64,000 nucleotides of DNA, taken from positions 124,001 to 188,000 of the IMG/VR virus record IMGVR_UViG_3300024358_000009; one strand, written 5' to 3'. The position numbers were made by a program, and so were the translations under genes. The notes below the pieces were generated by a model. The model saw only the letters and a list, made by a program, of their open reading frames with translations, had not been told where the DNA came from and did no database searches. Shown piece after piece: positions 10,330-22,334 of the stretch; positions within the stretch are counted from its first letter, which is position 1; each line of letters opens with the position of its first letter.

Positions 10330-11168
10330 GTGCTTTCCTTCTGTTCTTCCATAGTGTCAGCGTTCAAAATTGGCAAATCGGAGTTCCCATCCTCATAAAC
10401 ATGGGCAGATCCTAGTCTTTCCATCTCCTTAGATGACACATGCTTCATGATTTCCATGTGTCGCCCCATAAGTTCTCTGTTCTCTTCGTCTTGTAACTGC
10501 TTGATAATAGCTAAAAAGCTCTGTTTTGACGACTCAATTCTTGTAACTCTCTGCTCTCTAGTGGCTTTTAGGTCTTTTAGTAGTGCCTGATGCTTCTCTT
10601 CAAGCTTAATGAACTCACTAGATCGTGCTTGCTCTGCCTGTTTTGCTGCCTGAATCTGTGCTTCGAGCGATAAAACATACTCTCTGTCTTGTTCTGACAT
10701 TGCAGAACGGTCTGGAAAAGTAGAAAGATAGTCATTTTGCATAGAGACAAGCCTAGCTATCTCTTGTGCTGCACTGTATTTTGCTTTCGCATTACGGTGC
10801 ATCATAATTTCAAACTTTATAAGCAGAGAAATTTGAGTTTGTTCGGTCACTAACACATCATCTTTGAACTGAGCCATATACTGAGCGTACTTTTCTTCAT
10901 AATAAAGCAACTCATTGGGCGAAAGTTCTTCTGTTAACTGCTGCCAAGTCTTTGTTCTCTTAATATCCTTAGCTATTTCAACTTCTTTTTCGTTTAAAGA
11001 AGCCAATCGGCGATCAGCCTTGAGCATTAGTTCGCTCTGTTTAATCACTCTCTTTACTTGAGCCTCGCTCTTATTTAATAGAGTAGCAATTTCTGTAACG
11101 CCCATGGTTTTGGACAAGTTAAGAATTTGCTCCTTGTCATCACTCGTTACTGTCGTCTTCCTCGCCAT
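10326..11168 (-). CDS. HTH plus coiled-coil protein, candidate terminase small subunit
   Basis: N-terminal HTH (MGVTEIATLLNKSEAQVKR); lies upstream of terL in the same operon. Confidence 0.45.
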   Translation of the reverse strand: MARKTTVTSDDKEQILNLSKTMGVTEIATLLNKSEAQVKRVIKQSELMLKADRRLASLNEKEVEIAKDIKRTKTWQQLTEELSPNELLYYEEKYAQYMAQFKDDVLVTEQTQISLLIKFEIMMHRNAKAKYSAAQEIARLVSMQNDYLSTFPDRSAMSEQDREYVLSLEAQIQAAKQAEQARSSEFIKLEEKHQALLKDLKATREQRVTRIESSKQSFLAIIKQLQDEENRELMGRHMEIMKHVSSKEMERLGSAHVYEDGNSDLPILNADTMEEQKEST

Positions 11169-11772
11169 TAGTTCTCCACTCCGAAAGAATGTCTTTTATA
11201 TAAATTTCTAATTGTTTTTTCTTGGCCTTACTTATAGAAACACCCGCCCTCAGTTGTAAATATACCTGTCTTAATTCTACTGGAAGTTTTTCGTCTATTA
11301 ATTCTAACATTTCTTGAGTGGCGACATCATTAATAATATCGGAATCTCTTTCTATACTTTTGTCGCTAACGCTTGTGATATCACATGGTCGCATTAAGTT
11401 TTGCTTAGAGGAATTTCTTTTTTTCCAAGCTTTATATTTATCGCAGTACTCGCCATTTCCATGATCGCCCTCTTCATGACAAATTTTACAGGGCGGATCT
11501 GAGCGGTGAAATTTATCTCTTTTAAAATTAATCAGTCTGTTTTTTATATGTGAGTACAAGAAATTTTCTAGGGGGCGTTTGTTGTCGTAACGAGCCATAG
11601 CCTCCAAGCCAAATATTCTGGCTTCTTGCCTAATGTCATTTATATCGAAATAACCAAAGGAAAACCCTTGGCCTAAAATTGAAACTATCTTGTCTATTAT
11701 TGTAATTACTTCATCTACATCAAATTTTTTAGTTTTCAGTTTTAATGTTTTCTTCGATGATTTTTTCGGCAT
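11140..11772 (-). CDS. Sigma-70 family sigma factor (candidate late sigma)
   Basis: Region 2-like DIRQEARIFGLEAMARYD...FLYSHIKNRLINFKR, a Cys/His insertion and a short C-terminal helical region. Confidence 0.7.
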   Translation of the reverse strand: MPKKSSKKTLKLKTKKFDVDEVITIIDKIVSILGQGFSFGYFDINDIRQEARIFGLEAMARYDNKRPLENFLYSHIKNRLINFKRDKFHRSDPPCKICHEEGDHGNGEYCDKYKAWKKRNSSKQNLMRPCDITSVSDKSIERDSDIINDVATQEMLELIDEKLPVELRQVYLQLRAGVSISKAKKKQLEIYIKDILSEWRTNGEEDDSNE

Positions 11773-13556: not shown

Positions 13557-14045
13557 ATGACCACTTCAATCGACTATGCAAAGATTACTGAAAAGCTTGT
13601 TTCCGCACTTGGCAAGAAAATACGCAACTATGCGGACTGCCAAGACATAGCTCAAAATATCCTAGTGTATGCTTTGCAAAGTTATAACCCTGCTATGGGA
13701 TCGGCTTTTGAAACGCACTGCTTTACTGTTATGCGTGGCAAGTCCATTGATTTCCTGAGAAGTAAATCCCGCAAGGGTAATCTGGTAAGCTGGGATATCC
13801 TTGAAGCTAATGACAATAATTCAGAAAAAACACTAGCACAAGGTATAGAAATTGCCGAAAAAACCTCCAAGTATAACCTATTGGAGATTGCAGAAGAATA
13901 CTGCAACGAACAAGAATATTTTATCATCCAACGCAAGCTTGAAGGCTTCGATGGATATGAAATAGCCAATATGCTAGGGGTTAGCCCAGGATATGTTAGT
14001 CAACAATTGTCAAGAGCAATAGAGAAAATGAAGGGGGGGTTCTAG
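13557..14045 (+). CDS. ECF-like sigma-70 factor
   Basis: 162 aa with only region 2 (DCQDIAQN...SIDFLR) and a region 4 HTH (GYEIANMLGVSPGYVSQQLSRA); AAAGGAA RBS. Confidence 0.85.
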   Translation: MTTSIDYAKITEKLVSALGKKIRNYADCQDIAQNILVYALQSYNPAMGSAFETHCFTVMRGKSIDFLRSKSRKGNLVSWDILEANDNNSEKTLAQGIEIAEKTSKYNLLEIAEEYCNEQEYFIIQRKLEGFDGYEIANMLGVSPGYVSQQLSRAIEKMKGGF

Positions 14046-14294: not shown

Positions 14295-14522
14295 TCTAAA
14301 GGGTTTTAACCTAACCTGCCAGTCTTACCCAACCTGGCCGGACCAGCCTCGGTACGCACATAGGTAATTGTATTACTTGTACTATGCCCGCAAAAATTGG
14401 ATATCTTTATCTTATTATCCAAATATCTTTTTAAAAATATTTTATTTTTATTGTAAATAAATCTGCAAGCGTAGCGAATAAGATTATATAAGAGAGAAGG
14501 GAATAAACAAAAGGAGAATAAA

Positions 14523-14681
14523 ATGGAAATTACTTGCTTGTGCGGAATTGATAATGAGGGAAATATAAACGATGGAATTATCTGCCATATGTGCGAAGGT
14601 CAACTGGCAGGGATGATAGAAAAATGGAATATCGAACAAGCCCTAATGGAAGAATATGAAAATAATTTAGAAAAGTTCTAA
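14523..14681 (+). CDS. Small Cys-containing early protein (52 aa)
   Basis: Promoter and AAGGAG RBS; MEITCLCG...CHMC. Confidence 0.6.
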   Translation: MEITCLCGIDNEGNINDGIICHMCEGQLAGMIEKWNIEQALMEEYENNLEKF

Positions 14682-15015: not shown

Positions 15016-15315
15016 ATGTTTACGATTACTGCCGGATGTTTTAATCAGCCATGTGACCTCCAAGAGCAAATTGGGAAGTCTATTGTTATAGCTGACTACG
15101 CAAGCCCTGATGAGGCTGGCAAACAAGTTGCCAAACGAATAGGTAAAATAGTAGCGTTTAGGCGGTTTTGGCCTAAATATGTAGAGAAGGATGGTAAATG
15201 CAGAATGACTAACCTGATAACGGTTGAATATCAAAGCGATAATCATTATGCAGAGAAAACCATCTCTTCCTATCATCTAGGTAAGATTAGATCTGGGGTT
15301 ATCTTGCCAGTATAA
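15016..15315 (+). CDS. Hypothetical early protein
   Basis: 99 aa; GAAAGGAA RBS. Confidence 0.65.
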   Translation: MFTITAGCFNQPCDLQEQIGKSIVIADYASPDEAGKQVAKRIGKIVAFRRFWPKYVEKDGKCRMTNLITVEYQSDNHYAEKTISSYHLGKIRSGVILPV

Positions 15316-15380
15316 ACAAAAAAGTTTTTCCTGTTTTTTCCTAAATAAAAGCAGGGGGCAAGCGAATAAGAGTATATAAC

Positions 15381-15603
15381 GCTAGGGCACTTGCTGATAC
15401 AAGAGGGCCACTTCCTTGGTGAAAATGGGCTTATCAGAGTCTAAGTAACCTTAAGAGGATGGGATAGTTCGAGACTATCTGGCGTAACCATATAATGATA
15501 GGTATGTTTGGTGTTTAGGTGCAATCCTCCGTGAGATACGGCAAAACGAAAAACACCGTTTTTAAACCTGTTAGTGGGGATGTCTTATCCCTGCTAACCC
15601 TAC
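15381..15603 (+). ncRNA. Candidate structured ncRNA (about 220 nt)
   Basis: Starts just after the promoter at 15363; no RBS-led ORF; multiple helices, with G-U pairs favouring the + strand. Confidence 0.55.
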
Positions 15604-15880
15604 CGAAATTGGATATCTTTATCTAATTATATTCTTTTAAAATTTTTTTATTTTGTTGTAAATAATTTTACCCTGCCAGCGAATAAGATTATATAAGCTT
15701 GGTGGTAATGCTTAAACCATCTATGCGAATGAGTATAGAATGAGGGGAGCCTGGACTATAATTGGATAATCTTATCTTATTATATTATTTAAAATAATTT
15801 TATTTTTTTTGTAAATAAATCATAAGCACTAGCGAATAAGTATATATAAGAGATAACGATAACAACAAAAGGAGATTAAA

Positions 15881-16069
15881 ATGAGCAACTACAATCCATT
15901 CGTTTGCAATTTTGAAAGAGAAGTTGAGATTGCAAAAGGGATGAGTAATCAAGGTTTAATTTCGGCAATCGCCGAATGTCTAGAATGTATTTCAATAGGC
16001 TGTAATACAGATAAATATGTGGATCAAGCCAAAGTGTATAGGCAAGAGTTGGCCAAAAGGGTAAGATAA
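15881..16069 (+). CDS. Hypothetical early protein
   Basis: Promoter and AAGGAG RBS; 62 aa. Confidence 0.7.
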   Translation: MSNYNPFVCNFEREVEIAKGMSNQGLISAIAECLECISIGCNTDKYVDQAKVYRQELAKRVR

Positions 16070-16131
16070 AATAATTTTTTTATAAATATTTTAATCTTAC
16101 AAGCGAATAAGTTAGTATAAAGGAGAATGAT

Positions 16132-16815
16132 ATGAAAATGGAATTGAATACTGTTGAGATTAATACTTCTAAGACTCAGAAGATGCCATGGGAAAGTTGG
16201 GATTTACCAGCTTGGATGTGCAAGACTGGTGCTAAGTTAGTAAAGGTAAAGGGTTCTATATGTGAAGGATGCTATGCATTAAAAGGACGATACATATTTG
16301 GAACGGTGAAGAATGCAAACTTAAAAAGATTTGATCAAATAAAAGATATAAATAACTTGGAAGATTGGAAAAATTCTTTCATAAGCTTATTCAAGTCTAA
16401 GCTAAAAAGACTTTCAGCAGAAAAAAGGTTTTTCAGATGGTTTACTAGTGGGGATTTGCAATCCGTAGATATGTTAGTAGCAATTGTAAATATTGCAAAA
16501 GCTATTCCAGAAATTCAATTCTGGTTGCCAACAAAAGAACATGGCATAATAAGGGAATACCAAGCCATACATGGTGAATTCCCTGCAAATCTTAATGTTC
16601 GTGTTTCAATGTTCATGGTCAATCAGGAACCAAGTAAGGGCTTAGGTTTACCTACCAGTACAGTAGTTAATTCCCCTGATGATATGAATGATAAACATCA
16701 GAACTTGTGCCCTGCTAGTCTTGAACAATTCAACGGCAAAGCCGAGGTTAATTGTGGAGATTGCAGGAAATGCTGGGATAAGAATGTAGATAATGTGGCA
16801 TACATATACCACTAA
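16132..16815 (+). CDS. Gp88-like phage protein (Cys-rich, radical-SAM-related)
   Basis: Motifs C.TG.KL..VKGSICEGCYA, FRWFTSGD, FWLPTKE, CPA and CGDCRKCW. Confidence 0.75.
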   Translation: MKMELNTVEINTSKTQKMPWESWDLPAWMCKTGAKLVKVKGSICEGCYALKGRYIFGTVKNANLKRFDQIKDINNLEDWKNSFISLFKSKLKRLSAEKRFFRWFTSGDLQSVDMLVAIVNIAKAIPEIQFWLPTKEHGIIREYQAIHGEFPANLNVRVSMFMVNQEPSKGLGLPTSTVVNSPDDMNDKHQNLCPASLEQFNGKAEVNCGDCRKCWDKNVDNVAYIYH

Positions 16816-16868
16816 GAATTCTGGAAATAATTTTCTTTGGGAAACGAATAAGTAAGTAAGAGGTCAAT

Positions 16869-19312
16869 ATGTTTAAGTTAAGATTTCACTTGGCGAACGG
16901 TCCACATAAATATAAGTGGCAACTAAAAGATAGTGAAGGAAATGTTACCTATGTAGATCCTGAAAGTGTTAACTTCACAATGAAAAATTGTAAGTTGCAT
17001 AATAGCAAAAAGATAGCAGAAAGTATTTATTCAGGCAAAGAGAAGACCGTATGTTCTTGGATAGAATGCCAAGATATATCGATAAGGTTAAGTAGCGAAG
17101 AATTTCCTGACGAATTTTTTAATAACGAAGTAAGTTATAATCCAAGGTTGGCCCCCTTCTGGAGAAATGTAGAAGGAGAAAATATTGACGGTAAATTCTT
17201 TGAAGTGCTAGAGACAAAAGGAAGGAAGGTTTACGCATGAGTGTTGAAGAATGGTCAATCGCTGGTATGTTACTAGGTGCACTAATGATGAGCGGATCTT
17301 TACTTGTGCTAGGACTATCATGGGCAATTCAAAAGCTTGAAGAATACTGGGGGCCAATGTGATCTTTGAACAAACTATAGGTTACTTGATGTTTTTTCTT
17401 TGCGTAATGATCGCTAATTTTTTTCTTCTATTCTCAGGAGATAACTAAATGACATTAGCAGTAACGCTATTTACAGTTTATTTAGTTATTATGGCATTCA
17501 TGGGGGCAAACAAATGAAAAATAAATTTTTGTATAAAAAGTGTATTCCGTATAGCATTGCAGTTGTTTCAATAAAAGAAGATAAGCTTGTCTTAATTAAA
17601 GATAAAAATATGGAAAAAGAATTAAATGAAATAAATGAAGAATTTGAATCTGATGAAATAGAATATAATGAATTCATTAAACAAACAAACGAATGCTTAG
17701 ATCATTATTTTAGCTTGTATTATGCAAGCTAGACTTGCCAAATTAGATATCTTTATCCAAATATAATTTTAAAAATTTTGTAAATAATTTTTTATATATA
17801 GCGAATAAGAATACAGAGGGTAAACCCGCCATGGGAAACTATGGGATGGGCAGAGCCTGGACTATAATTAGATAACTTTATCCGATTATCTTTTTATAAA
17901 ATTTTTATTTTTTTTGTAAATAAATTATAACTAATCACGAATAAGATTATATAAGAGGAAACAACTAAAACGAAAGGAAAAGAAGATGGAACTTGTAAGG
18001 GAAATCAAAGATTGGGCTTTGGATAATTATGATGCTGGCGGTCATTGGATTGTTGAAACTTTTTCCGATGAGGAGATTGCCGAACAGTTCAAGACATTGA
18101 ACGAAGCTAAAAAGTATTGTGGTTTAATACAAGATAGGCACGAAGATATCTGCAACGCATAAGGAGAATGAAATGGATTTTGTACTTGAGAATGTAGGCA
18201 AGATGGTAAAATTTTGGAACTTAATGCCAGAAACCTACCAAGGTTTTGGCTATGAAGTTGAAGGAGATTGGGATTACGATGCTGAAAAATTTCAGCCAAA
18301 GTGGTTTCAGTTGTATGACGAAGAACAGGTTTTGAGGTTAGGTTATTGTCCTCCCGACCTTTTGCAATATGTCGAAAGGGCTTGCAAAGAAATTGCTGCT
18401 GACCTTGAAGCGAAAGGTTTAATAGGTGATACATTAATCGAAGAAGACGAATACACATATGAGGATTATTTAGCTGACAAGGCAGACAAAGAATATTACG
18501 AAAGGAACTAATCATGTTTAAGTTTGTAGAAAAGCTATTTGGTTTTGATAGTGGTCGAATTGAGTATCTTGAATCGAAATGTTTGGAACAATCGGAGCTA
18601 ATTAAAAACCTTGCAGAAGGATTTAAAGAACAAACATTGTTATTGCAAAAGATAAGTGAACGAAAGCAAGATATTGACTATGACAGAATTGATATAGATT
18701 ACTACGATTTGGCAAACAAGATTAATTTAAAAGCCGTAGCTAGTGGAGTAGGTCTTAAATATCTAGCAGAAGAAATTGATCTTGGCGAATTAGCCAACAA
18801 TATCAGCCTAGATGATTTAAGTAGTTATTTCAATGTGGATGAAGTAGCAGCTAACTTAGACTTAAATGAGGATGATTTTGTAGATACTATTGCAGAAAAA
18901 GTTTTGGAAAAACTTGTAAATAAATATAGGGCGAAAGCCGAATAAGTATATAGAAAGGAGATGGTCATGATTAAGTTTACTCTGACAACTAAACAATTTG
19001 AACGCAGAGGCGTTATGGCAAGAGGAAGCTCACGCTTTAAGGACGAAAGAAAAAATCCTAAAGGCGGTAGAAGTGGCGACAAAGTTAGATTTAAGAAGGG
19101 AGAATACTAAAATGGATGTTGATGTAACACTAAGTTTGGTTGAAATAAAACAAATTGTAGAATCTTTGAGATACGAAGTTAGGGTAAGCAATTACATGAG
19201 AAAACATCGTAGTGAATACGCAAACCATCTTATTGAACTATCCAATAGGTTGGAAAAAATAATGATCTATCATGCAAGGAAGGATGATAAAGTTAGATGC
19301 GAACAACCTTAG
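16869..19312 (+). CDS. Cluster of small hypothetical early genes (16869-17240, 17514-17732, 17986-18162, 18173-18511, 18514-18945 and others)
   Basis: Closely packed ORFs with RBSs downstream of CGAATA promoters. Confidence 0.65.
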
Positions 19313-19599
19313 TCAAGGTTAATGTAGAGTTTATCTTGCCAGCATATCTAAGAACTAAAGAAGAAGTGGCAAGCTATATCAACACACATCTTAAGAACAA
19401 CAACAATCTTAAGTATGTAATGCTTATCGAAGGCGATGTAGAAGATTTTAACATTCAAGCAGAAAGGTTTTAACTATGATTGATTTTCTTTGCTCAATGT
19501 ATTTTGCTTTGGAGTTTTACCAAATGGAAGTAATCTTTAACTTGTTCGGTGATAGGATTTTGCTTTAGACTTCTTAGAGGAATATTTCCTCTGCTAAAG

Positions 19600-19629
19600 A
19601 TTTTATCAACCCGCCCAAAATCCTGTCAA
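19600..19629 (-). promoter_or_regulatory. Sigma70-type promoter on the antisense strand
   Basis: TTGACA-N18-TAAAAT with an extended -10 TG. Confidence 0.65.
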
Positions 19630-20147
19630 GAAAAATCCGTAAGGATTTGCAAAATAGATGAACTTTTATGAAACTTGGTTTGCTACTTTCCCAAGGGGCA
19701 AAAAAAGTAGCACTTTTAATAATGTGCTGACAGTAAGCACTTTGTTTTCATTTATTGATATAAACTCTTTGGGTTCAATGACTTATGTTTATTTTTTAAA
19801 TTCTTCTTGTAAGGAATACTGGTATGTTTTCCTTACAAATATAGTGGGTAGGCTTGTCCTACCCCTTCTAAATTGACCGAAATTGGATATCTTTATCTAA
19901 TTGTAATTTTAAAAAATTTTTGTAAATAATTTTTATTAGCTGACGAATAAGTATATATAGAGAGGAGTAACTATTAAAATTTGAGTTATGAGTGGGAGTT
20001 CCTGCTTTCCAAAAGGAGAGGATGAGGGGAGCCTGGAAACTAATTAGATATGTTTATCTTATTATCTATTTAAGAATTTTTTTATTTTTATATAAATAAA
20101 TCTGTATGGCCAACGAATAAGATTATGTAAGAGGAAAGGAAAAGAAA

Positions 20148-20626
20148 ATGAAATATGAAATAACAAGAGAATTCATCGGTGGTTTATTGAATGGGTTAAT
20201 CATTACCCAAACCATGAATAGTGATTGTGGTTATTATGTTGGGCAAGTTGTGAAAAATCCATATGGTAACACTTCTCCATATAAAATTTTGGAAATTAGG
20301 AAATATTCTCCAATGGTCGGCGAATAAGTCTATATAGAAGAAAGGAAAGTAAAATGGAAGTTAATGTAAGGGATTCAAGAAGCGTTGCAATTGGGGTCAA
20401 ATATATTGGCCCAACCAATACAAGAGGTGCAAAGGTTAAAGCCTTTGTAAGATCGGCGACAAGGATGATACATAAAATTGAAATGCCTTGGGATCATGAA
20501 TTCGATAATTCTGTAAATTACTGCAATGCAGCAAAAAAATTGGTAGAAAAGATGCATTGGAGTGGAAATTTGGTCGGCGGTTGGTTAGGCGATCAATATG
20601 TGTGCGTATTCGAAAAGTGGAATTAA
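20148..20626 (+). CDS. Two small hypothetical early genes (20148-20327, 20354-20626)
   Basis: Each has its own CGAATA promoter and AAAGGAAA RBS. Confidence 0.65.
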
Positions 20627-20721
20627 TTTTGGAAATATTTGCCAATGGTTGGCGAATAAGTATATGTAAGGTTGAGAGTTTTAATTTATAGGGCTGAAAG
20701 CCCAAGAAAGGTTTGGTCATC

Positions 20722-21858
20722 ATGTCTAATGGTAGCATCGGTATTCGTTCTGTGCGTGGTTTTTCCGGTTCGGCTTATGCTGGTGTAATCGAAAGATTCA
20801 ACAATCGTAAGGATCATTATCATGACAGTCTTTGCACTGTTGCCGGTGAATCCGCTAGGGTTCGTCCAGTTGTAGTCGATGGTAAGTTCCAGCTTCTGGA
20901 TAAGAAGAACGAAAAGTTCTATACTCCAACAAAACACGCTCTTAGTCAATTCGCTCAGAAGACTAAGTGGGGTTCTTATACAATCAATAAGTTGGCAGAG
21001 TCTAAAGATGTACGCCATCACAATATATTGCGTGACCTTCTTGATATTTCTTTCCAAGAGTTCGGAGGAGAATATCTCTTTAGGTTCAACGATCAGGATG
21101 ATACCTGTCGGGCGTTTTTGAGTGATCGTTACGCAATCATTAATAATGGATGGGTATTGGATGAAGTCCAGAAGTTCCTACCAGCTGAATGCAAAGATGC
21201 GGTAGCTATGGATAAGTCCGGCGAAGACTTTATCAACTTCATGGTAGTGCTACCAAGTAGCCTTAAGTCTTCCGATGATAGCGACTATCAAGGTTTGATC
21301 AAGGTTAAGAACTCTGAGATTGGCACTCATCGCCTTGATGTTACTGCCGGTGTCTTCCGCACTATTTGTTCTAATGGTGCAATCGGTTGGGTTAAGCATA
21401 ACGATGTAAGTGTAGTCCATCGTGGTAAGGTAGACTTCGAGCTTTTGGCTAATCATATTCAGTCGGCTATTAGCTCACATATTCAGGCTATGCCTACCAT
21501 GATTGAAAAGCTTTTAGGTACTAAGCAAATGGGTTGGGATGGATCAATGACCCCCCTGTTTGCCTCTGTCGCTCAAACCTATAAGTTGAGCAAGAACGAA
21601 GTGGAGTCCGTTCATACGGCATGGGGTGTAGAACGCAATGAGACTCCTCAATATGCCAAGACCCTGTTCGGCGTGGTTAATAGCCTAACAAGGGGTAGTC
21701 AACGGATGGTTGAGTCTTCTTGGGAAAAGCTTAACGACATTGGTGGTGAGTTGGCCAATTACGATGAAAGTGATTGGACTGGCCTTAAAGCCAAGGCTAG
21801 GGCAATGACCTCCAAGGATGTTGAGAATGTCTTGGGCAAGGAACTATCCTTCGCCTAA
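20722..21858 (+). CDS. DUF932-family phage/plasmid protein
   Basis: Motifs RAFLSDRY, NSEIG, FRTICSNG and TLFGVVNSLT; likely start MSNG at 20722 behind a GAAAGGT RBS. Confidence 0.75.
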   Translation: MSNGSIGIRSVRGFSGSAYAGVIERFNNRKDHYHDSLCTVAGESARVRPVVVDGKFQLLDKKNEKFYTPTKHALSQFAQKTKWGSYTINKLAESKDVRHHNILRDLLDISFQEFGGEYLFRFNDQDDTCRAFLSDRYAIINNGWVLDEVQKFLPAECKDAVAMDKSGEDFINFMVVLPSSLKSSDDSDYQGLIKVKNSEIGTHRLDVTAGVFRTICSNGAIGWVKHNDVSVVHRGKVDFELLANHIQSAISSHIQAMPTMIEKLLGTKQMGWDGSMTPLFASVAQTYKLSKNEVESVHTAWGVERNETPQYAKTLFGVVNSLTRGSQRMVESSWEKLNDIGGELANYDESDWTGLKAKARAMTSKDVENVLGKELSFA

Positions 21859-21868
21859 GATAACCCAA

Positions 21869-21942
21869 GGGGATGTAGACCAACAGGCAGAGTCAAAGGA
21901 CTTAAAATCCTTCCAGTATGGGTTCGACTCCCATCATCCCTA
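21869..21942 (+). tRNA. tRNA-Leu (anticodon UAA), short variable loop, no encoded CCA
   Basis: Acceptor GGGGAUG/CAUCCCU; anticodon arm AAGGA-CUUAAAA-UCCUU; T arm AUGGG-UUCGACU-CCCAU; discriminator A. Confidence 0.92.
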
Positions 21943-21945
21943 ATC

Positions 21946-22045
21946 CCCGCCTTACCTTTCGGGCGGGTTCCCCCATCCAGCTTGTTTCGTTTCCTTTCAG
22001 GCTGGATGCCGTCTAGGGGTGGCCTTGACCTCTCCATCCCTAGAC
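21946..22045 (+). ncRNA. Three-hairpin RNA with pyrimidine-rich (anti-Shine-Dalgarno-like) loops
   Basis: Hairpins at 21946-21967, 21974-22008 and 22011-22045, each with a G-U pair that forms only on the + strand. Confidence 0.6.
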
Positions 22046-22089
22046 ATTCTTATAAATATTTTTACCTCTGTATCGAATAAGATTATATA

Positions 22090-22173
22090 GAGGTAACCTG
22101 CTTGTCTTAGCAATGATAAGCGGGTCGCTGGGGTATTTTACCCATATTATCTAAGTCTATATAGGCGTACCTC
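22090..22173 (+). ncRNA. Candidate multi-branch small RNA
   Basis: Follows the promoter at 22074; closing stem GAGGUA/UACCUC; 11-bp hairpin ACCUGCUUGUC/GAUAAGCGGGU; hairpin GGGUA/UACCC. Confidence 0.5.
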
Positions 22174-22334
22174 ATCCCCAATTCCCCTTATGGAAGGCCA
22201 AGTGGGCGGGTTTTCAGCGATTCCCTCACGCTCCTGTATATACTTATTCGTTATAGAAGCGGAAATATTTTTTTAATTTTATTTAAAATATTTTTGGTTG
22301 GTGAGCGAATAAGACTATATAAAGGAGAAAGCAA

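What the first reader, a model, noticed from the sequence alone, without database searches (positions are those of the whole stretch)
15607..20120. Triplicated cassette: operator, promoter, variable small RNA, GAGCCTGGA, operator, promoter, ORF
Seen three times (15607-15845, 17741-17950, 19881-20125). A CGAATA promoter points into a 50-85 nt ORF-less segment (15695-15759, 17815-17865, 19958-20041). Each differs in sequence but folds into short + strand hairpins, e.g. CCAUGG-GAAA-CUAUGG. Each ends in GAGCCTGGA(CTAT/AACT) abutting the next operator, and two share ATGAGGGGAGCCTGGA. Inference: a small-RNA family with a constant 3' handle and a variable body, expressed at the start of infection (guide, decoy or RNA anti-defence), or a cassette-shuffling scaffold. 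I know no described system with this layout.
Basis: partly seen in the sequence, partly recalled or inferred. Interest (0 to 1): 0.8.

Follow-up and report, generated by a model that had tools for sequence, protein, structure and literature searches.

The report
Phage tandem-promoter cassettes with structured RNA
Three promoter cassettes in the early region of an uncultivated river phage each carry one copy of a short folded RNA element that is conserved in related phages, matches no Rfam family, and probably helps control phage transcription, although its exact job is unknown.

Summary
The window is a ~220 kb phage from river and lake samples. It has three tandem modules, each made of a palindromic site, an A/T tract and a promoter. 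Between the two promoters of each module lie 50-85 nt that lack a conserved ORF.

- **Promoter class.** The consensus is AAATA-N15-CGAATAAG-N2-TATATAAG, found 20 times against 1.7 expected. It is probably read by a phage sigma factor encoded just upstream.
- **Conservation.** At least nine diverged relatives keep such tandem promoters.
- **Shared RNA core.** The segments between the promoters are not guide-like variable bodies. All carry one ~45 nt core: CCYG, a variable hairpin, an RAU bulge, then GGGGA plus a tail.
- **Covariation.** In 43 distinct copies, 93% of cells pair against 75% in shuffles. There are 84 compensatory cells against 22, and G-U outnumbers A-C 28 to 3, so the fold is read on the transcribed strand.
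- **GAGCCTGGA.** This is one of two tail variants of the core.
- **More copies.** The window holds two further copies on the minus strand.
- **Palindromes.** These behave as oriented DNA sites, not RNA stems.
- **Databases.** No Rfam family matches, and no copy turned up in 185,579 bacterial or archaeal genomes.

Whether discrete small RNAs are made is unresolved. There is no canonical terminator, and the cassette-3 leader is not over-represented in metatranscriptomes. My best reading is a cis-acting leader element inside PeSL-like cassettes.

The parts
13557..14045 (+). Phage-encoded two-domain sigma factor gene (162 aa). Probable reader of the CGAATAAG promoter class.
   Evidence: Pfam Sigma70_r2 and Sigma70_r4; PHROG 'RNA polymerase sigma factor'. 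The first CGAATAAG promoter lies 430 bp downstream. The link between this sigma and the promoters is inferred.
14395..14482 (+). Single module: palindrome 14395-14416, A/T tract, promoter (GTAAATAA 14453-14460, CGAATAAG 14475-14482). It drives a 52-aa ORF at 14523.
15576..15591 (+). Hairpin GGGGAT-GTCT-TATCCC that closes the preceding block, 15 nt before the first palindrome of cassette 1.
   Evidence: Sequence (repeat family D14). Hairpins of different sequence stand at the same place in relatives.
15607..15628 (+). Cassette 1, first palindromic DNA site (AATTGGATA-TCTT-TATCTAATT).
15658..15687 (+). Cassette 1, upstream promoter P1 (GTAAATAA-N14-CGAATAAG).
15695..15759 (+). Cassette 1 leader. 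The RNA core element is at 15714-15758 and ends in GAGCCTGGA (15747-15755).
   Evidence: Covariance model R1: 41.4 bits, E about 1e-7. Ortholog in L147 and paralogs in five lineages.
15760..15781 (+). Cassette 1, second palindromic DNA site.
15811..15840 (+). Cassette 1, downstream promoter P2. It drives a 62-aa ORF at 15881-16069.
17741..17762 (+). Cassette 2, first palindromic site.
17780..17809 (+). Cassette 2, upstream promoter P1.
17814..17865 (+). Cassette 2 leader. The RNA core is at 17822-17864 and includes the CCAUGG-GAAA-CUAUGG hairpin; GAGCCTGGA is at 17853-17861.
   Evidence: R1: 38.4 bits. The ortholog L018:14047-14090 has GGGCCTGGA.
17866..17887 (+). Cassette 2, second palindromic site.
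17916..17945 (+). Cassette 2, downstream promoter P2. It drives a 58-aa ORF at 17986-18162.
19846..19864 (+). Strong hairpin GGGTAGG-CTTG-TCCTACCC that closes the preceding block, before cassette 3.
   Evidence: The same hairpin type recurs in L018 and L140.
19881..19902 (+). Cassette 3, first palindromic site.
19922..19951 (+). Cassette 3, upstream promoter P1.
19958..20041 (+). Cassette 3 leader. The RNA core is at 19998-20040 (hairpin CTTTCC-AAAA-GGAGAG); GAGCCTGGA is at 20029-20037.
   Evidence: R1: 41.3 bits. RNAalifold on 5 orthologs: 4 pairs with compensatory change; GGGGA and GCCT of the tail pair with upstream GGGAGTTCCY.
20042..20063 (+). Cassette 3, second palindromic site.
20092..20121 (+). 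Cassette 3, downstream promoter P2. It drives a 59-aa ORF at 20148-20327.
22074..22250 (.). Convergent promoter pair: CGAATAAG at 22074-22081 (+) and at 22243-22250 (-). The overlapping transcripts would be antisense to each other.
   Evidence: The same convergent pair occurs in 8 other loci.
22164..22213 (-). Fourth copy of the RNA core, directly after the minus-strand promoter. No minus-strand gene follows.
   Evidence: R1: 33.2 bits
21926..21970 (-). Fifth, weaker copy of the RNA core. It was not in the seed alignment. It is antisense to the 3' end of tRNA-Leu (21869-21942).
   Evidence: R1: 26.9 bits, E 3e-4 with filters off

Best explanation
Each cassette is a composite regulatory module of a ~220 kb uncultivated freshwater phage. 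A module consists of three parts:
- an oriented 22-bp palindromic DNA site (AATTRGATA-TCTT-TATCYWATT);
- an A/T tract;
- a promoter of the phage's own class (AAATA-N15-CGAATAAG-N2-TATATAAG), probably read by the phage-encoded sigma factor.

Two modules stand in tandem in each cassette. The 50-85 nt between them is the 5' leader of the transcript from the upstream promoter. It carries one copy of a conserved ~45 nt RNA element: CCYG, a sequence-variable hairpin, a 3-nt RAU bulge, then GGGGA plus a tail. GAGCCTGGA is one of the two tail variants.

I infer that this element is a common recognition module for a protein or for RNA polymerase. It would act in cis on transcripts from the upstream promoter, through antitermination, processing or stability. 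The downstream promoter would supply transcripts without the element. The repeated modules also serve as recombination points where genes are swapped.

Shown: the layout, its conservation, the RNA fold and its strand.
Inferred: the sigma dependence, action in cis, and the nature of the factor.
For: - Motif enrichment.
- Sigma factor gene next to the promoter cluster. Sigma-70-like sites are not enriched (24 found, 40 expected in shuffles).
- Tandem promoters with no ORF in between recur in all six lineages mapped in full: window, L018, L140, L147, L150 and L151. L156 and several IMG/VR contigs add more.
- These relatives are diverged. Their sigma factors are 59% identical (L018) and their DUF932 proteins 68-87% identical to the window's.
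- One core in all leaders: 32 distinct copies in alignment A5 show 92.8% paired cells against 75.6% in shuffles (0 of 500 reached it) and 55 compensatory cells against 18.5. Slid controls gave 38-64%.
- After a covariance-model search, 62 matches (43 distinct) show 93.0% paired against 75.3% and 84 compensatory cells against 21.9.
- G-U 28 against A-C 3, so the fold is read on the strand downstream of the promoter.
- The hairpin loop in cassette-3 orthologs is 4, 5 or 7 A long, so the segment is not coding.
- No terminator lies between the leader and the downstream promoter. Cassettes without a second palindrome have no hairpin there at all. Read-through is therefore the default expectation.
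- All copies in the window lie within 15.7-22.2 kb.
Against: - One copy (22164-22213, minus strand, conserved in 8 other loci) follows its own promoter but has no downstream gene. It cannot be a 5' UTR, which points to a self-contained or antisense role.
- No partner protein was identified.
- No terminators that would need to be overcome were demonstrated.
- Transcript ends were not seen. The single read-laying run failed on a filter.
- The tail type correlates with the DNA site that follows: GCCTGGA with a palindrome, TGCGGWACG with GTATAAC direct repeats. Part of the conservation could therefore be at DNA level.
Confidence: 0.5

Rival explanations
1. The leaders are discrete, trans-acting small RNAs. 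Transcription from the upstream promoter would stop at the second palindrome. The stop could be a weak A/U-rich terminator (palindrome followed by AUCUUUUU) or a protein roadblock bound to the site. The released RNAs would act as decoys or sponges for a host or phage factor through the shared core.
For: - The stand-alone minus-strand copy has its own promoter and no downstream gene. It is conserved in 8 other loci.
- There are 4-5 copies per genome of one conserved core.
- The palindrome is often followed by ATCTTTTT.
- Several GGA triplets occur in the conserved tail (sequence). My recollection that this resembles CsrA-binding RNAs is untested.
Against: - No canonical intrinsic terminator was found. 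The palindrome folded as RNA gives only about -6 kcal/mol.
- Palindrome half-sites vary independently: G-U 16 against A-C 12, and T-T at position 4 in 13 of 35 sites. It is therefore a DNA site, not a selected RNA stem.
- Cassettes without a second palindrome have nothing terminator-like.
- The cassette-3 leader's sampled words are listed in only 6 RNA runs, while 24 runs hold 48-100% of the surrounding 4.9 kb. This is a weak test: only 5 words were sampled, and short RNAs are lost in standard libraries.
Confidence: 0.25
2. The cassettes are only DNA-level recombination scaffolds made of duplicated promoter modules, like PeSLs. The sequence between the two promoters would be a remnant without a function of its own.
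For: - The position of cassette 1 shifts relative to gene g6.
- Relative L140 lacks leader 2.
- The gene directly downstream of each cassette differs between lineages.
- The layout matches PeSLs as described in PMC4122927.
Against: - The core is conserved across lineages, and the hairpin is kept through compensatory changes.
- The fold shows a strand-specific G-U bias.
- The 19 bases GGATGAGGGGAGCCTGGAC read the same in L151 and in window cassette 3, apart from the last base. L151's DUF932 protein is only 68% identical to the window's.
Confidence: 0.1
3. The conserved ATG(A/G)GG..GCCTGGA encodes a leader mini-peptide, M(R/G)(G/R)AW(T/K)(I/L)I(G/R), used for translational attenuation.
For: An in-frame ATG (GTG in L143) followed by a 9-28 codon frame is present in the GCCTGGA-tail copies read.
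Against: - There is no Shine-Dalgarno sequence at a workable distance, whereas the genes read in this region carry AAGGAG-type sites a few bases before the ATG.
- The ATG is replaced by ATA, ATC or ATT in the other tail type of the same core.
- The stop codon position is not conserved (9 to 28 codons).
- Loop-length changes of 1 and 3 nt break the longer frame.
Confidence: 0.03
4. The leaders are origin transcripts. A structured RNA with a G-rich 3' part would form an R-loop at the following A/T-rich tract and prime replication. This compares with the T7 primary origin (tandem promoters plus an A/T-rich region), T4 oriF/oriG and ColE1 RNA II; these comparisons come from my own knowledge.
For: The order is promoter, structured RNA, GGGGA-rich tail, then a ~70 bp almost pure A/T tract with a protein-binding palindrome.
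Against: - Four or five such elements within 7 kb is unusual for origins.
- The same A/T tract and palindrome also stand upstream of promoters that no RNA precedes.
- The minus-strand copies lack the A/T tract.
- Nothing here tested replication.
Confidence: 0.05
5. The RNAs are anti-defence decoys, for example mimics of a host CRISPR repeat. From memory, GAGTTCC, a stem, then GGGGATGA resembles type I-E repeats.
For: Only a remembered resemblance of the cassette-3 type to type I-E repeats. Each copy has its own promoter.
Against: - The host is unknown, so no repeat could be compared.
- The resemblance does not hold for the cassette-1 and cassette-2 types.
- No copy of the second-tail (TGCGGWACG) form of the core was found in 185,579 bacterial and archaeal genomes. 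All 13 pattern hits were chance hits in high-GC coding DNA.
Confidence: 0.05

Closest known systems
PeSL (promoter-early stem-loop) cassettes of T4-like phages (Arbiol et al. 2010, PMC2839356; Comeau et al. 2014, PMC4122927)
   Same: - A composite, repeated intergenic module: inverted repeat, A/T-rich tract, promoter, Shine-Dalgarno sequence and start codon.
- Concentrated among small early genes.
- Associated with insertions, deletions and gene replacements between related phages.
   Different: - The promoter is not sigma-70-like; it is a phage-specific class.
- The inverted repeat behaves as an oriented DNA-binding site rather than a terminator stem.
- The modules stand in fixed tandem pairs.
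- A conserved structured RNA element lies between the pair. The PeSL text I read does not mention one.
Promoter-proximal antitermination RNA sites of lambdoid phages (lambda nut boxA/boxB; HK022 put). From my own knowledge, not tested here.
   Same: - A short structured RNA element placed just downstream of early promoters.
- Several copies per genome that share conserved bases while the rest varies.
- Expected to act in cis on the transcribing polymerase.
   Different: - No sequence resemblance to boxA/boxB or put.
- Here the conserved part is the helix base, the bulge and the tail, while the loop is free to vary. In boxB the loop is the recognised part.
- A second promoter follows the element.
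- One copy has no downstream gene.
- No N-like protein or read-through terminators were identified.
Stoperators of cluster A mycobacteriophages (PMC9283540)
   Same: - A repeated DNA site, all copies in one orientation relative to transcription, in short intergenic regions of an early gene arm.
- That arm also carries L5 gp88-like and gp82-like genes.
- A bound protein could stop transcription arriving from upstream.
   Different: - Only 7 sites were found in 64 kb.
- The sites are palindromic, not asymmetric 13-mers.
- Every site lies 61-129 bp upstream of a promoter rather than inside transcribed units.
- No repressor was identified.
T7 primary origin (tandem promoters 1.1A and 1.1B followed by an A/T-rich region). 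From my own knowledge.
   Same: Tandem phage-specific promoters combined with an A/T-rich tract.
   Different: The order differs: here the A/T tract lies between the two promoters. The element occurs 3-5 times per genome and carries a covarying RNA fold.

Membership tests
PeSL cassettes (T4-like phages) | Composite motif: stem-loop or inverted repeat just upstream of an A/T-rich tract, a promoter, a Shine-Dalgarno sequence and a start codon. | tested here: met
   The alignment of the three cassettes and the repeat families show palindrome, A/T tract, promoter, AAGGAG-type site and ATG. Definition taken from PMC4122927.
PeSL cassettes (T4-like phages) | The promoter is a host sigma-70-type early promoter (or a Mot-type middle promoter). 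| tested here: not met
   The conserved blocks are AAATA-N15-CGAATAAG-N2-TATATAAG. The sigma-70 scan found 24 sites against 40 expected and none at the cassettes' conserved blocks.
PeSL cassettes (T4-like phages) | The stem-loop acts as the terminator of the upstream gene. | tested here: inconclusive
   Half-sites vary independently (G-U 16, A-C 12, many T-T), and the RNA fold is only about -6 kcal/mol. Separate GC-rich hairpins stand upstream of the first palindromes.
PeSL cassettes (T4-like phages) | Located at insertion, deletion or replacement breakpoints between related phages. | tested here: met
   Synteny map of six lineages.
Antitermination RNA sites (nut, put) | Position just downstream of an early promoter, within the transcript. 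| tested here: met
   The core starts about 20-60 nt downstream of the start of the CGAATAAG block.
Antitermination RNA sites (nut, put) | boxA/boxB sequence, or the put two-stem fold. | tested here: not met
   By inspection the core has no boxA-like CGCUCUUA, and its hairpin loops are not conserved. No Rfam family matches the leaders even at E up to 10.
Antitermination RNA sites (nut, put) | Read-through of downstream terminators that depends on the element. | not testable with these tools
   Needs transcription assays or end mapping.
Stoperators (cluster A mycobacteriophages) | Many copies of one oriented repressor site spread through transcribed regions. | tested here: not met
   Seven sites, all in one orientation (centre TCTT, never AAGA), but every one lies 61-129 bp upstream of a promoter.
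Terminator-ended trans-acting small RNA | Own promoter. | tested here: met
Terminator-ended trans-acting small RNA | Intrinsic terminator at the 3' end. | tested here: not met
   Cassettes in relatives without a palindrome have no hairpin either.
Terminator-ended trans-acting small RNA | A discrete, abundant transcript. | tested here: inconclusive
   The cassette-3 leader's words are listed in 6 RNA runs, while 24 runs hold the region. Read laying failed.
Any Rfam 15 family | Covariance-model match. | tested here: not met
   Only two tRNAs passed at gathering score. Nothing lay on the leaders at E up to 10.
Type III toxin-antitoxin RNA | Tandem direct repeats of the RNA unit followed by a terminator and a toxin ORF. 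| tested here: not met
   There is one unit per cassette. The downstream ORFs are 58-62 aa with no family match.
CRISPR-repeat mimic (RNA anti-CRISPR) | Sequence and structure match to the host's CRISPR repeat. | not testable with these tools
   The host is unknown. The resemblance to type I-E repeats is from memory only.

The most novel reading that the evidence does not exclude
The ~45 nt core (CCYG, variable hairpin, RAU bulge, GGGGA tail) is a new class of phage RNA signal present 4-5 times per genome. One reading is that it reprograms the transcribing polymerase, as a put-like or nut-like antitermination system working with a phage sigma factor. The other is that it is released as a set of decoy RNAs that titrate one host or phage protein. 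In either case the palindromic sites would decide whether the RNA stays attached to the mRNA.
Probability: 0.2. Interest if true: 0.8.

Novelty: new variant of a known kind. Interest (0 to 1): 0.55.

Why it matters
Large uncultivated freshwater phages are almost unexplored at the level of gene regulation. This locus offers a compact, testable regulatory grammar:
- a phage sigma factor;
- about 20 promoters of one unusual class;
- an oriented palindromic DNA site;
- a covarying RNA element that matches no Rfam family and was not found in cellular genomes.

If the element acts on RNA polymerase or sequesters a protein, it would add a new RNA-based control device to the short list known from lambda, HK022 and T4. 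Even if it is only a leader, it shows that PeSL-like modular cassettes exist outside T4-like phages and with a non-sigma-70 promoter.

Tried and rejected
- **Annotated phages.** BLASTN of 15300-20200 against 50,697 phage records found nothing.
- **Close relatives.** Scans of IMG/VR with the GAGCCTGGA-palindrome junction, the sigma factor and DUF932 returned only identical copies of the same phage. Diversity came from protein homologs in Logan, ENA and JGI and from one metagenome pattern scan.
- **Rfam.** Gathering and permissive thresholds gave no family for the leaders.
- **Single-sequence folding.** Not significant.
- **Mini-ORF and the longer 35-aa frame through the palindrome.** Rejected. 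There is no usable Shine-Dalgarno sequence, the ATG is absent in the other tail type, and loop-length changes shift the frame.
- **Palindrome as an RNA terminator.** Rejected as the main reading.
- **Hammerhead-like reading of GAUGAG...GAAAC and a K-turn reading of the RAU bulge.** Considered by inspection and dropped. The required core bases are missing, and Rfam found no ribozyme.
- **Bacterial and archaeal genomes.** Only chance hits in high-GC coding DNA.
- **A closing helix between the 5' AAGCUU and the tail in the cassette-1 type.** Not consistent across members.

Full report
**What the window is.** The window is part of a phage. A large terminase gene and structural genes lie on the minus strand at 1-11.8 kb. 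A long run of small plus-strand genes starts near 12 kb, and GC content is about 33%. Identical copies occur on IMG/VR and JGI contigs of up to 221-222 kb. Twenty-four riverine metatranscriptome runs hold 48-100% of the sampled words of 15300-20200. No annotated phage record resembles the region.

**Check of the observation.**
- CGAATAAG occurs 20 times against 1.7 expected, and 18 copies are on the plus strand between 14475 and 23170.
- It is part of a longer conserved promoter-like block, (G/C)TAAATAA-N14-CGAATAAG-N2-TATATAAG.
- The palindrome AATTRGATA-N4-TATCYRATT has seven sites: 14395, 15607, 15760, 17741, 17866, 19881 and 20042.
- Exact GAGCCTGGA occurs only three times, each 4 nt before a palindrome.
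- The three cassettes align over their whole length, and the leader bodies are their least similar part.
- In each cassette the upstream promoter is followed by the next promoter after 153, 136 or 170 nt. No ORF of 30 aa or more with a ribosome-binding site lies in between.

**The promoter class.** The ORF at 13557-14045 is a two-domain sigma factor (Sigma70_r2 plus r4; PHROG 'RNA polymerase sigma factor'). An A/T-rich stretch precedes it, and the first CGAATAAG promoter follows 430 bp later. Sigma-70-like sites are not enriched in 12-24 kb (24 found, 40 expected). I infer that the CGAATAAG promoters are read by this phage sigma factor. They would then be delayed-early or middle promoters, not the very first transcripts. 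From memory, TAAA-N17-CGAATAA resembles the sigma-28 consensus TAAA-N15-GCCGATAA; I did not test this.

**Relatives.**
- Homologs of the sigma factor and of the DUF932 protein (20713-21858) led to syntenic contigs: L018 (sigma 59% identical), L147, L150, L151, L154 and L156. Their DUF932 proteins are 67-87% identical to the window's, except L018's at 96%.
- One metagenome pattern scan added L140, L141, L143 and L144.
- A promoter-pattern scan added further IMG/VR contigs that use the same promoter class.
- In every lineage mapped, promoters stand in tandem with an ORF-less stretch between them. There are usually three such pairs on the same gene backbone.

**What lies between the promoters.** The leaders first looked like several families. 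All of them share one core. The core reads CCYG (CCAT in some copies), then a hairpin whose sequence is free, then (G)RAT, one or two bases, GGGGA, and one of two tails.
- The tail GCCTGGA(A/C) is followed by a palindrome or a degenerate half-site.
- The tail TGCGG(A/T)ACG is followed by direct repeats such as GTATAAC-N2-GTATAAC.

GAGCCTGGA is therefore the last A of GGGGA joined to the first tail type. It is not invariant: L018 has GGGCCTGGA and GAATCTGGA, and L156 has GAGGCTGGA.

**Evidence that the core is a folded RNA.**
- Twenty-eight distinct hairpins stand at the same place, with a mean z of -3.8 against shuffles.
- On a MAFFT alignment of 32 distinct cores (A5), the structure 'CCY:GGG outer helix plus 6-bp inner helix' has 92.8% paired cells against 75.6% in shuffles (0 of 500 reached it). 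It has 55 compensatory cells against 18.5. Slid controls gave 38-64%.
- A covariance model built from that alignment found 62 matches (43 distinct) in 30 loci. These show 93.0% paired cells and 84 compensatory cells against 21.9. This alignment is fitted to the model, so the MAFFT figures are the more conservative ones.
- Five of the six inner pairs show changes on both sides, with up to five pair types.
- The outer helix shows only C-G to U-G changes, so it is conserved but not proven by covariation.
- G-U pairs outnumber A-C 28 to 3. The fold is therefore read on the strand downstream of the promoter, as RNA.
- In cassette-3 orthologs the hairpin loop is AAAA, AAAAA or AAAAAAA, and in two lineages the stem has a different sequence. 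This rules out coding.
- In that type, RNAalifold pairs the GGGGA and GCCT of the tail with the upstream GGGAGTTCCY. If so, much of the 'handle' is paired rather than free.

**More copies.** The model finds five copies in the window, all between 15.7 and 22.2 kb.
- Three are in the cassettes.
- One is at 22164-22213 on the minus strand, directly after a minus-strand CGAATAAG promoter at 22243-22250.
- A weaker one, not in the seed, is at 21926-21970 on the minus strand, antisense to the end of tRNA-Leu.

The 22074(+)/22250(-) convergent promoter pair with the minus-strand core occurs in eight other loci. No minus-strand gene follows it.

**The palindromes.** Across 35 regex hits in eight loci (33 are true sites; two lie in coding DNA):
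- The core GATA-N4-TATC is invariant, but it was part of the search pattern.
- The centre is nearly always TCTT and never AAGA.
- The 3' flank ATTATCTTTTTAAAA is conserved.
- The outer positions often cannot pair: position 4 is T-T in 13 hits, and position 5 is G-T in 13 and A-C in 6.
- There is no G-U over A-C bias overall (16 against 12).

As RNA the element folds at only about -6 kcal/mol. It therefore behaves as an oriented DNA site for a dimeric protein, always 61-129 bp upstream of a promoter. Whether it activates, represses or blocks incoming polymerase is unknown. GC-rich hairpins of varying sequence, often with a CTTG loop, stand 12-16 nt upstream of the first palindrome of a cassette. 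They probably mark the end of the previous transcription block.

**Small RNA or leader?**
- No canonical terminator separates the leader from the downstream promoter.
- Cassettes with the second tail type have no hairpin there at all.
- The five sampled words of the cassette-3 leader are listed for only six RNA runs. Four of these hold all five words and two hold part. By contrast, 24 runs hold 48-100% of the surrounding 4.9 kb. The leader is therefore not over-represented.
- That test is weak, because few words were sampled and short RNAs are lost in standard libraries.
- The stand-alone minus-strand copy argues that the element can work without a downstream gene.

I rate 'cis-acting leader element' at 0.5 and 'discrete trans-acting small RNAs' at 0.25.

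**Modular shuffling.** The synteny map shows three points.
- Cassette 1 stands before the 62-aa gene in the window and L147, but after it in L018, L140, L151 and L156.
- L140 lacks leader 2 and has two palindromes with one promoter instead.
- The gene directly after each cassette differs between lineages.

This matches the behaviour described for PeSLs in T4-like phages (PMC2839356, PMC4122927).

**Comparison with known systems.**
- The layout is closest to PeSLs. It fails the sigma-70 promoter criterion and adds a conserved RNA element.
- Its position resembles nut and put sites, without any sequence or fold resemblance.
- The oriented DNA sites recall stoperators (PMC9283540). Unlike stoperators, they are palindromic, few, and always promoter-associated.
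- No Rfam family matches.
- A strict pattern for the second-tail form of the core finds 15 IMG/VR loci. All have about 36% GC and the promoter upstream.
- The same pattern finds only chance hits in high-GC coding DNA among 185,579 bacterial and archaeal genomes.

**Verdict.** The finding is real and conserved. The interpretation needs correcting: the RNA is one structured family with a covarying hairpin, not a set of variable guides with a free handle. The function is open. I class it as a new variant of a known kind, namely phage composite promoter cassettes with promoter-proximal RNA elements. Interest is 0.55.

Noticed in passing
window 15363-15606 (+): A CGAATAAG promoter at 15363 runs into about 220 nt without an ORF. 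The stretch contains a long-range CTGATA...TATCAG pairing and a T-arm-like GGGATAGTTCGAGACTATC. It also contains a canonical terminator-like stem, GGTGTTT (15510-15516) with AAACACC (15551-15557), followed by GTTTTT. Parts are homologous to L140:1683-1830 and to the 5' half of the long leader at L018:12235-12320, with a compensatory change (CCGT..ACGG against CGGT..ACCG). This is a separate candidate small RNA.
   Followed up: partly
window 22074-22250 (both strands); same pair in L140, L144, L147, L148, L150, L151, L154, L156: Convergent CGAATAAG promoters lie about 170 nt apart, so the two transcripts would overlap as antisense partners. The plus-strand RNA starts with its own covarying hairpin: CCTGCTTGTC..GATAAGCGGG in the window and CCTGTATGTC..GATATACGGG in L140. 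The minus-strand RNA carries the core element.
   Followed up: partly
window 21926-21970 (-): A weak fifth copy of the core (26.9 bits) lies antisense to the 3' end of tRNA-Leu (21869-21942). No promoter lies directly upstream. It would sit on the same minus-strand transcript as the fourth copy if that transcript is not terminated.
   Followed up: no
window 19476-19880 (+): A 30-aa hydrophobic ORF (19476-19568, MIDFLCSMYFALEFYQMEVIFNLFGDRILL) is conserved in L018 and L140. About 300 nt follow with several hairpins, including a terminator-like GTGCT..AGCAC plus TTTGTTTT at 19724-19748. The stretch is also conserved in L140 and ends at the GGGTAGG-CTTG-TCCTACCC hairpin.
   Followed up: no
L018:16448-16585: An extra tandem-promoter unit that is absent from the window. 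A promoter is followed by about 95 nt without an ORF, with a closing stem CTGCGA..TCGCAG, an inner CCCTCGAAAAAGGG hairpin and TATTTTTT. It has no palindrome and no core element. This looks like a terminator-ended small RNA gene.
   Followed up: no
window 11140-11772 (-): A second sigma-like ORF (210 aa, weak Sigma70_r2 match, E 5e-4) sits at the head of the leftward structural gene block. It may be a late sigma factor. The ortholog in L018 and L151 is annotated the same way.
   Followed up: partly
window 18961-19110 (+): A very basic 49-aa protein (MIKFTLTTKQFERRGVMARGSSRFKDERKNPKGGRSGDKVRFKKGEY) is conserved in five lineages and has no family match. It is a speculative candidate for binding the RNA core or the palindrome.
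   Followed up: no
window 20653-20712 (+): The 5' leader of the DUF932 gene carries a hairpin GGGCTGAAAGCCC. Relatives have GGGCAAAAGCCC (L018) and GGGGCTAGAAATAGCCCC (L065, L128) at the same place.
   Followed up: no
window 20713-21858 compared with L018:16651-17778: The DUF932 protein is 96% identical between the window and L018, while their sigma factors are only 59% identical. This points to very uneven divergence or to recent exchange of this gene.
   Followed up: no
L046, L147:8355-8400, L151:6040-6080, L151:8845-8880, L154, L156: Cassettes whose core ends in TGCGGWACG have, in place of the palindrome, short direct repeats (GGTATAAC-N2-AGTATAAC or GTAATAC-TTG-GTAATAC) about 45 nt upstream of the next promoter's AAATA block. 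This suggests a second kind of DNA-binding regulator.
   Followed up: no
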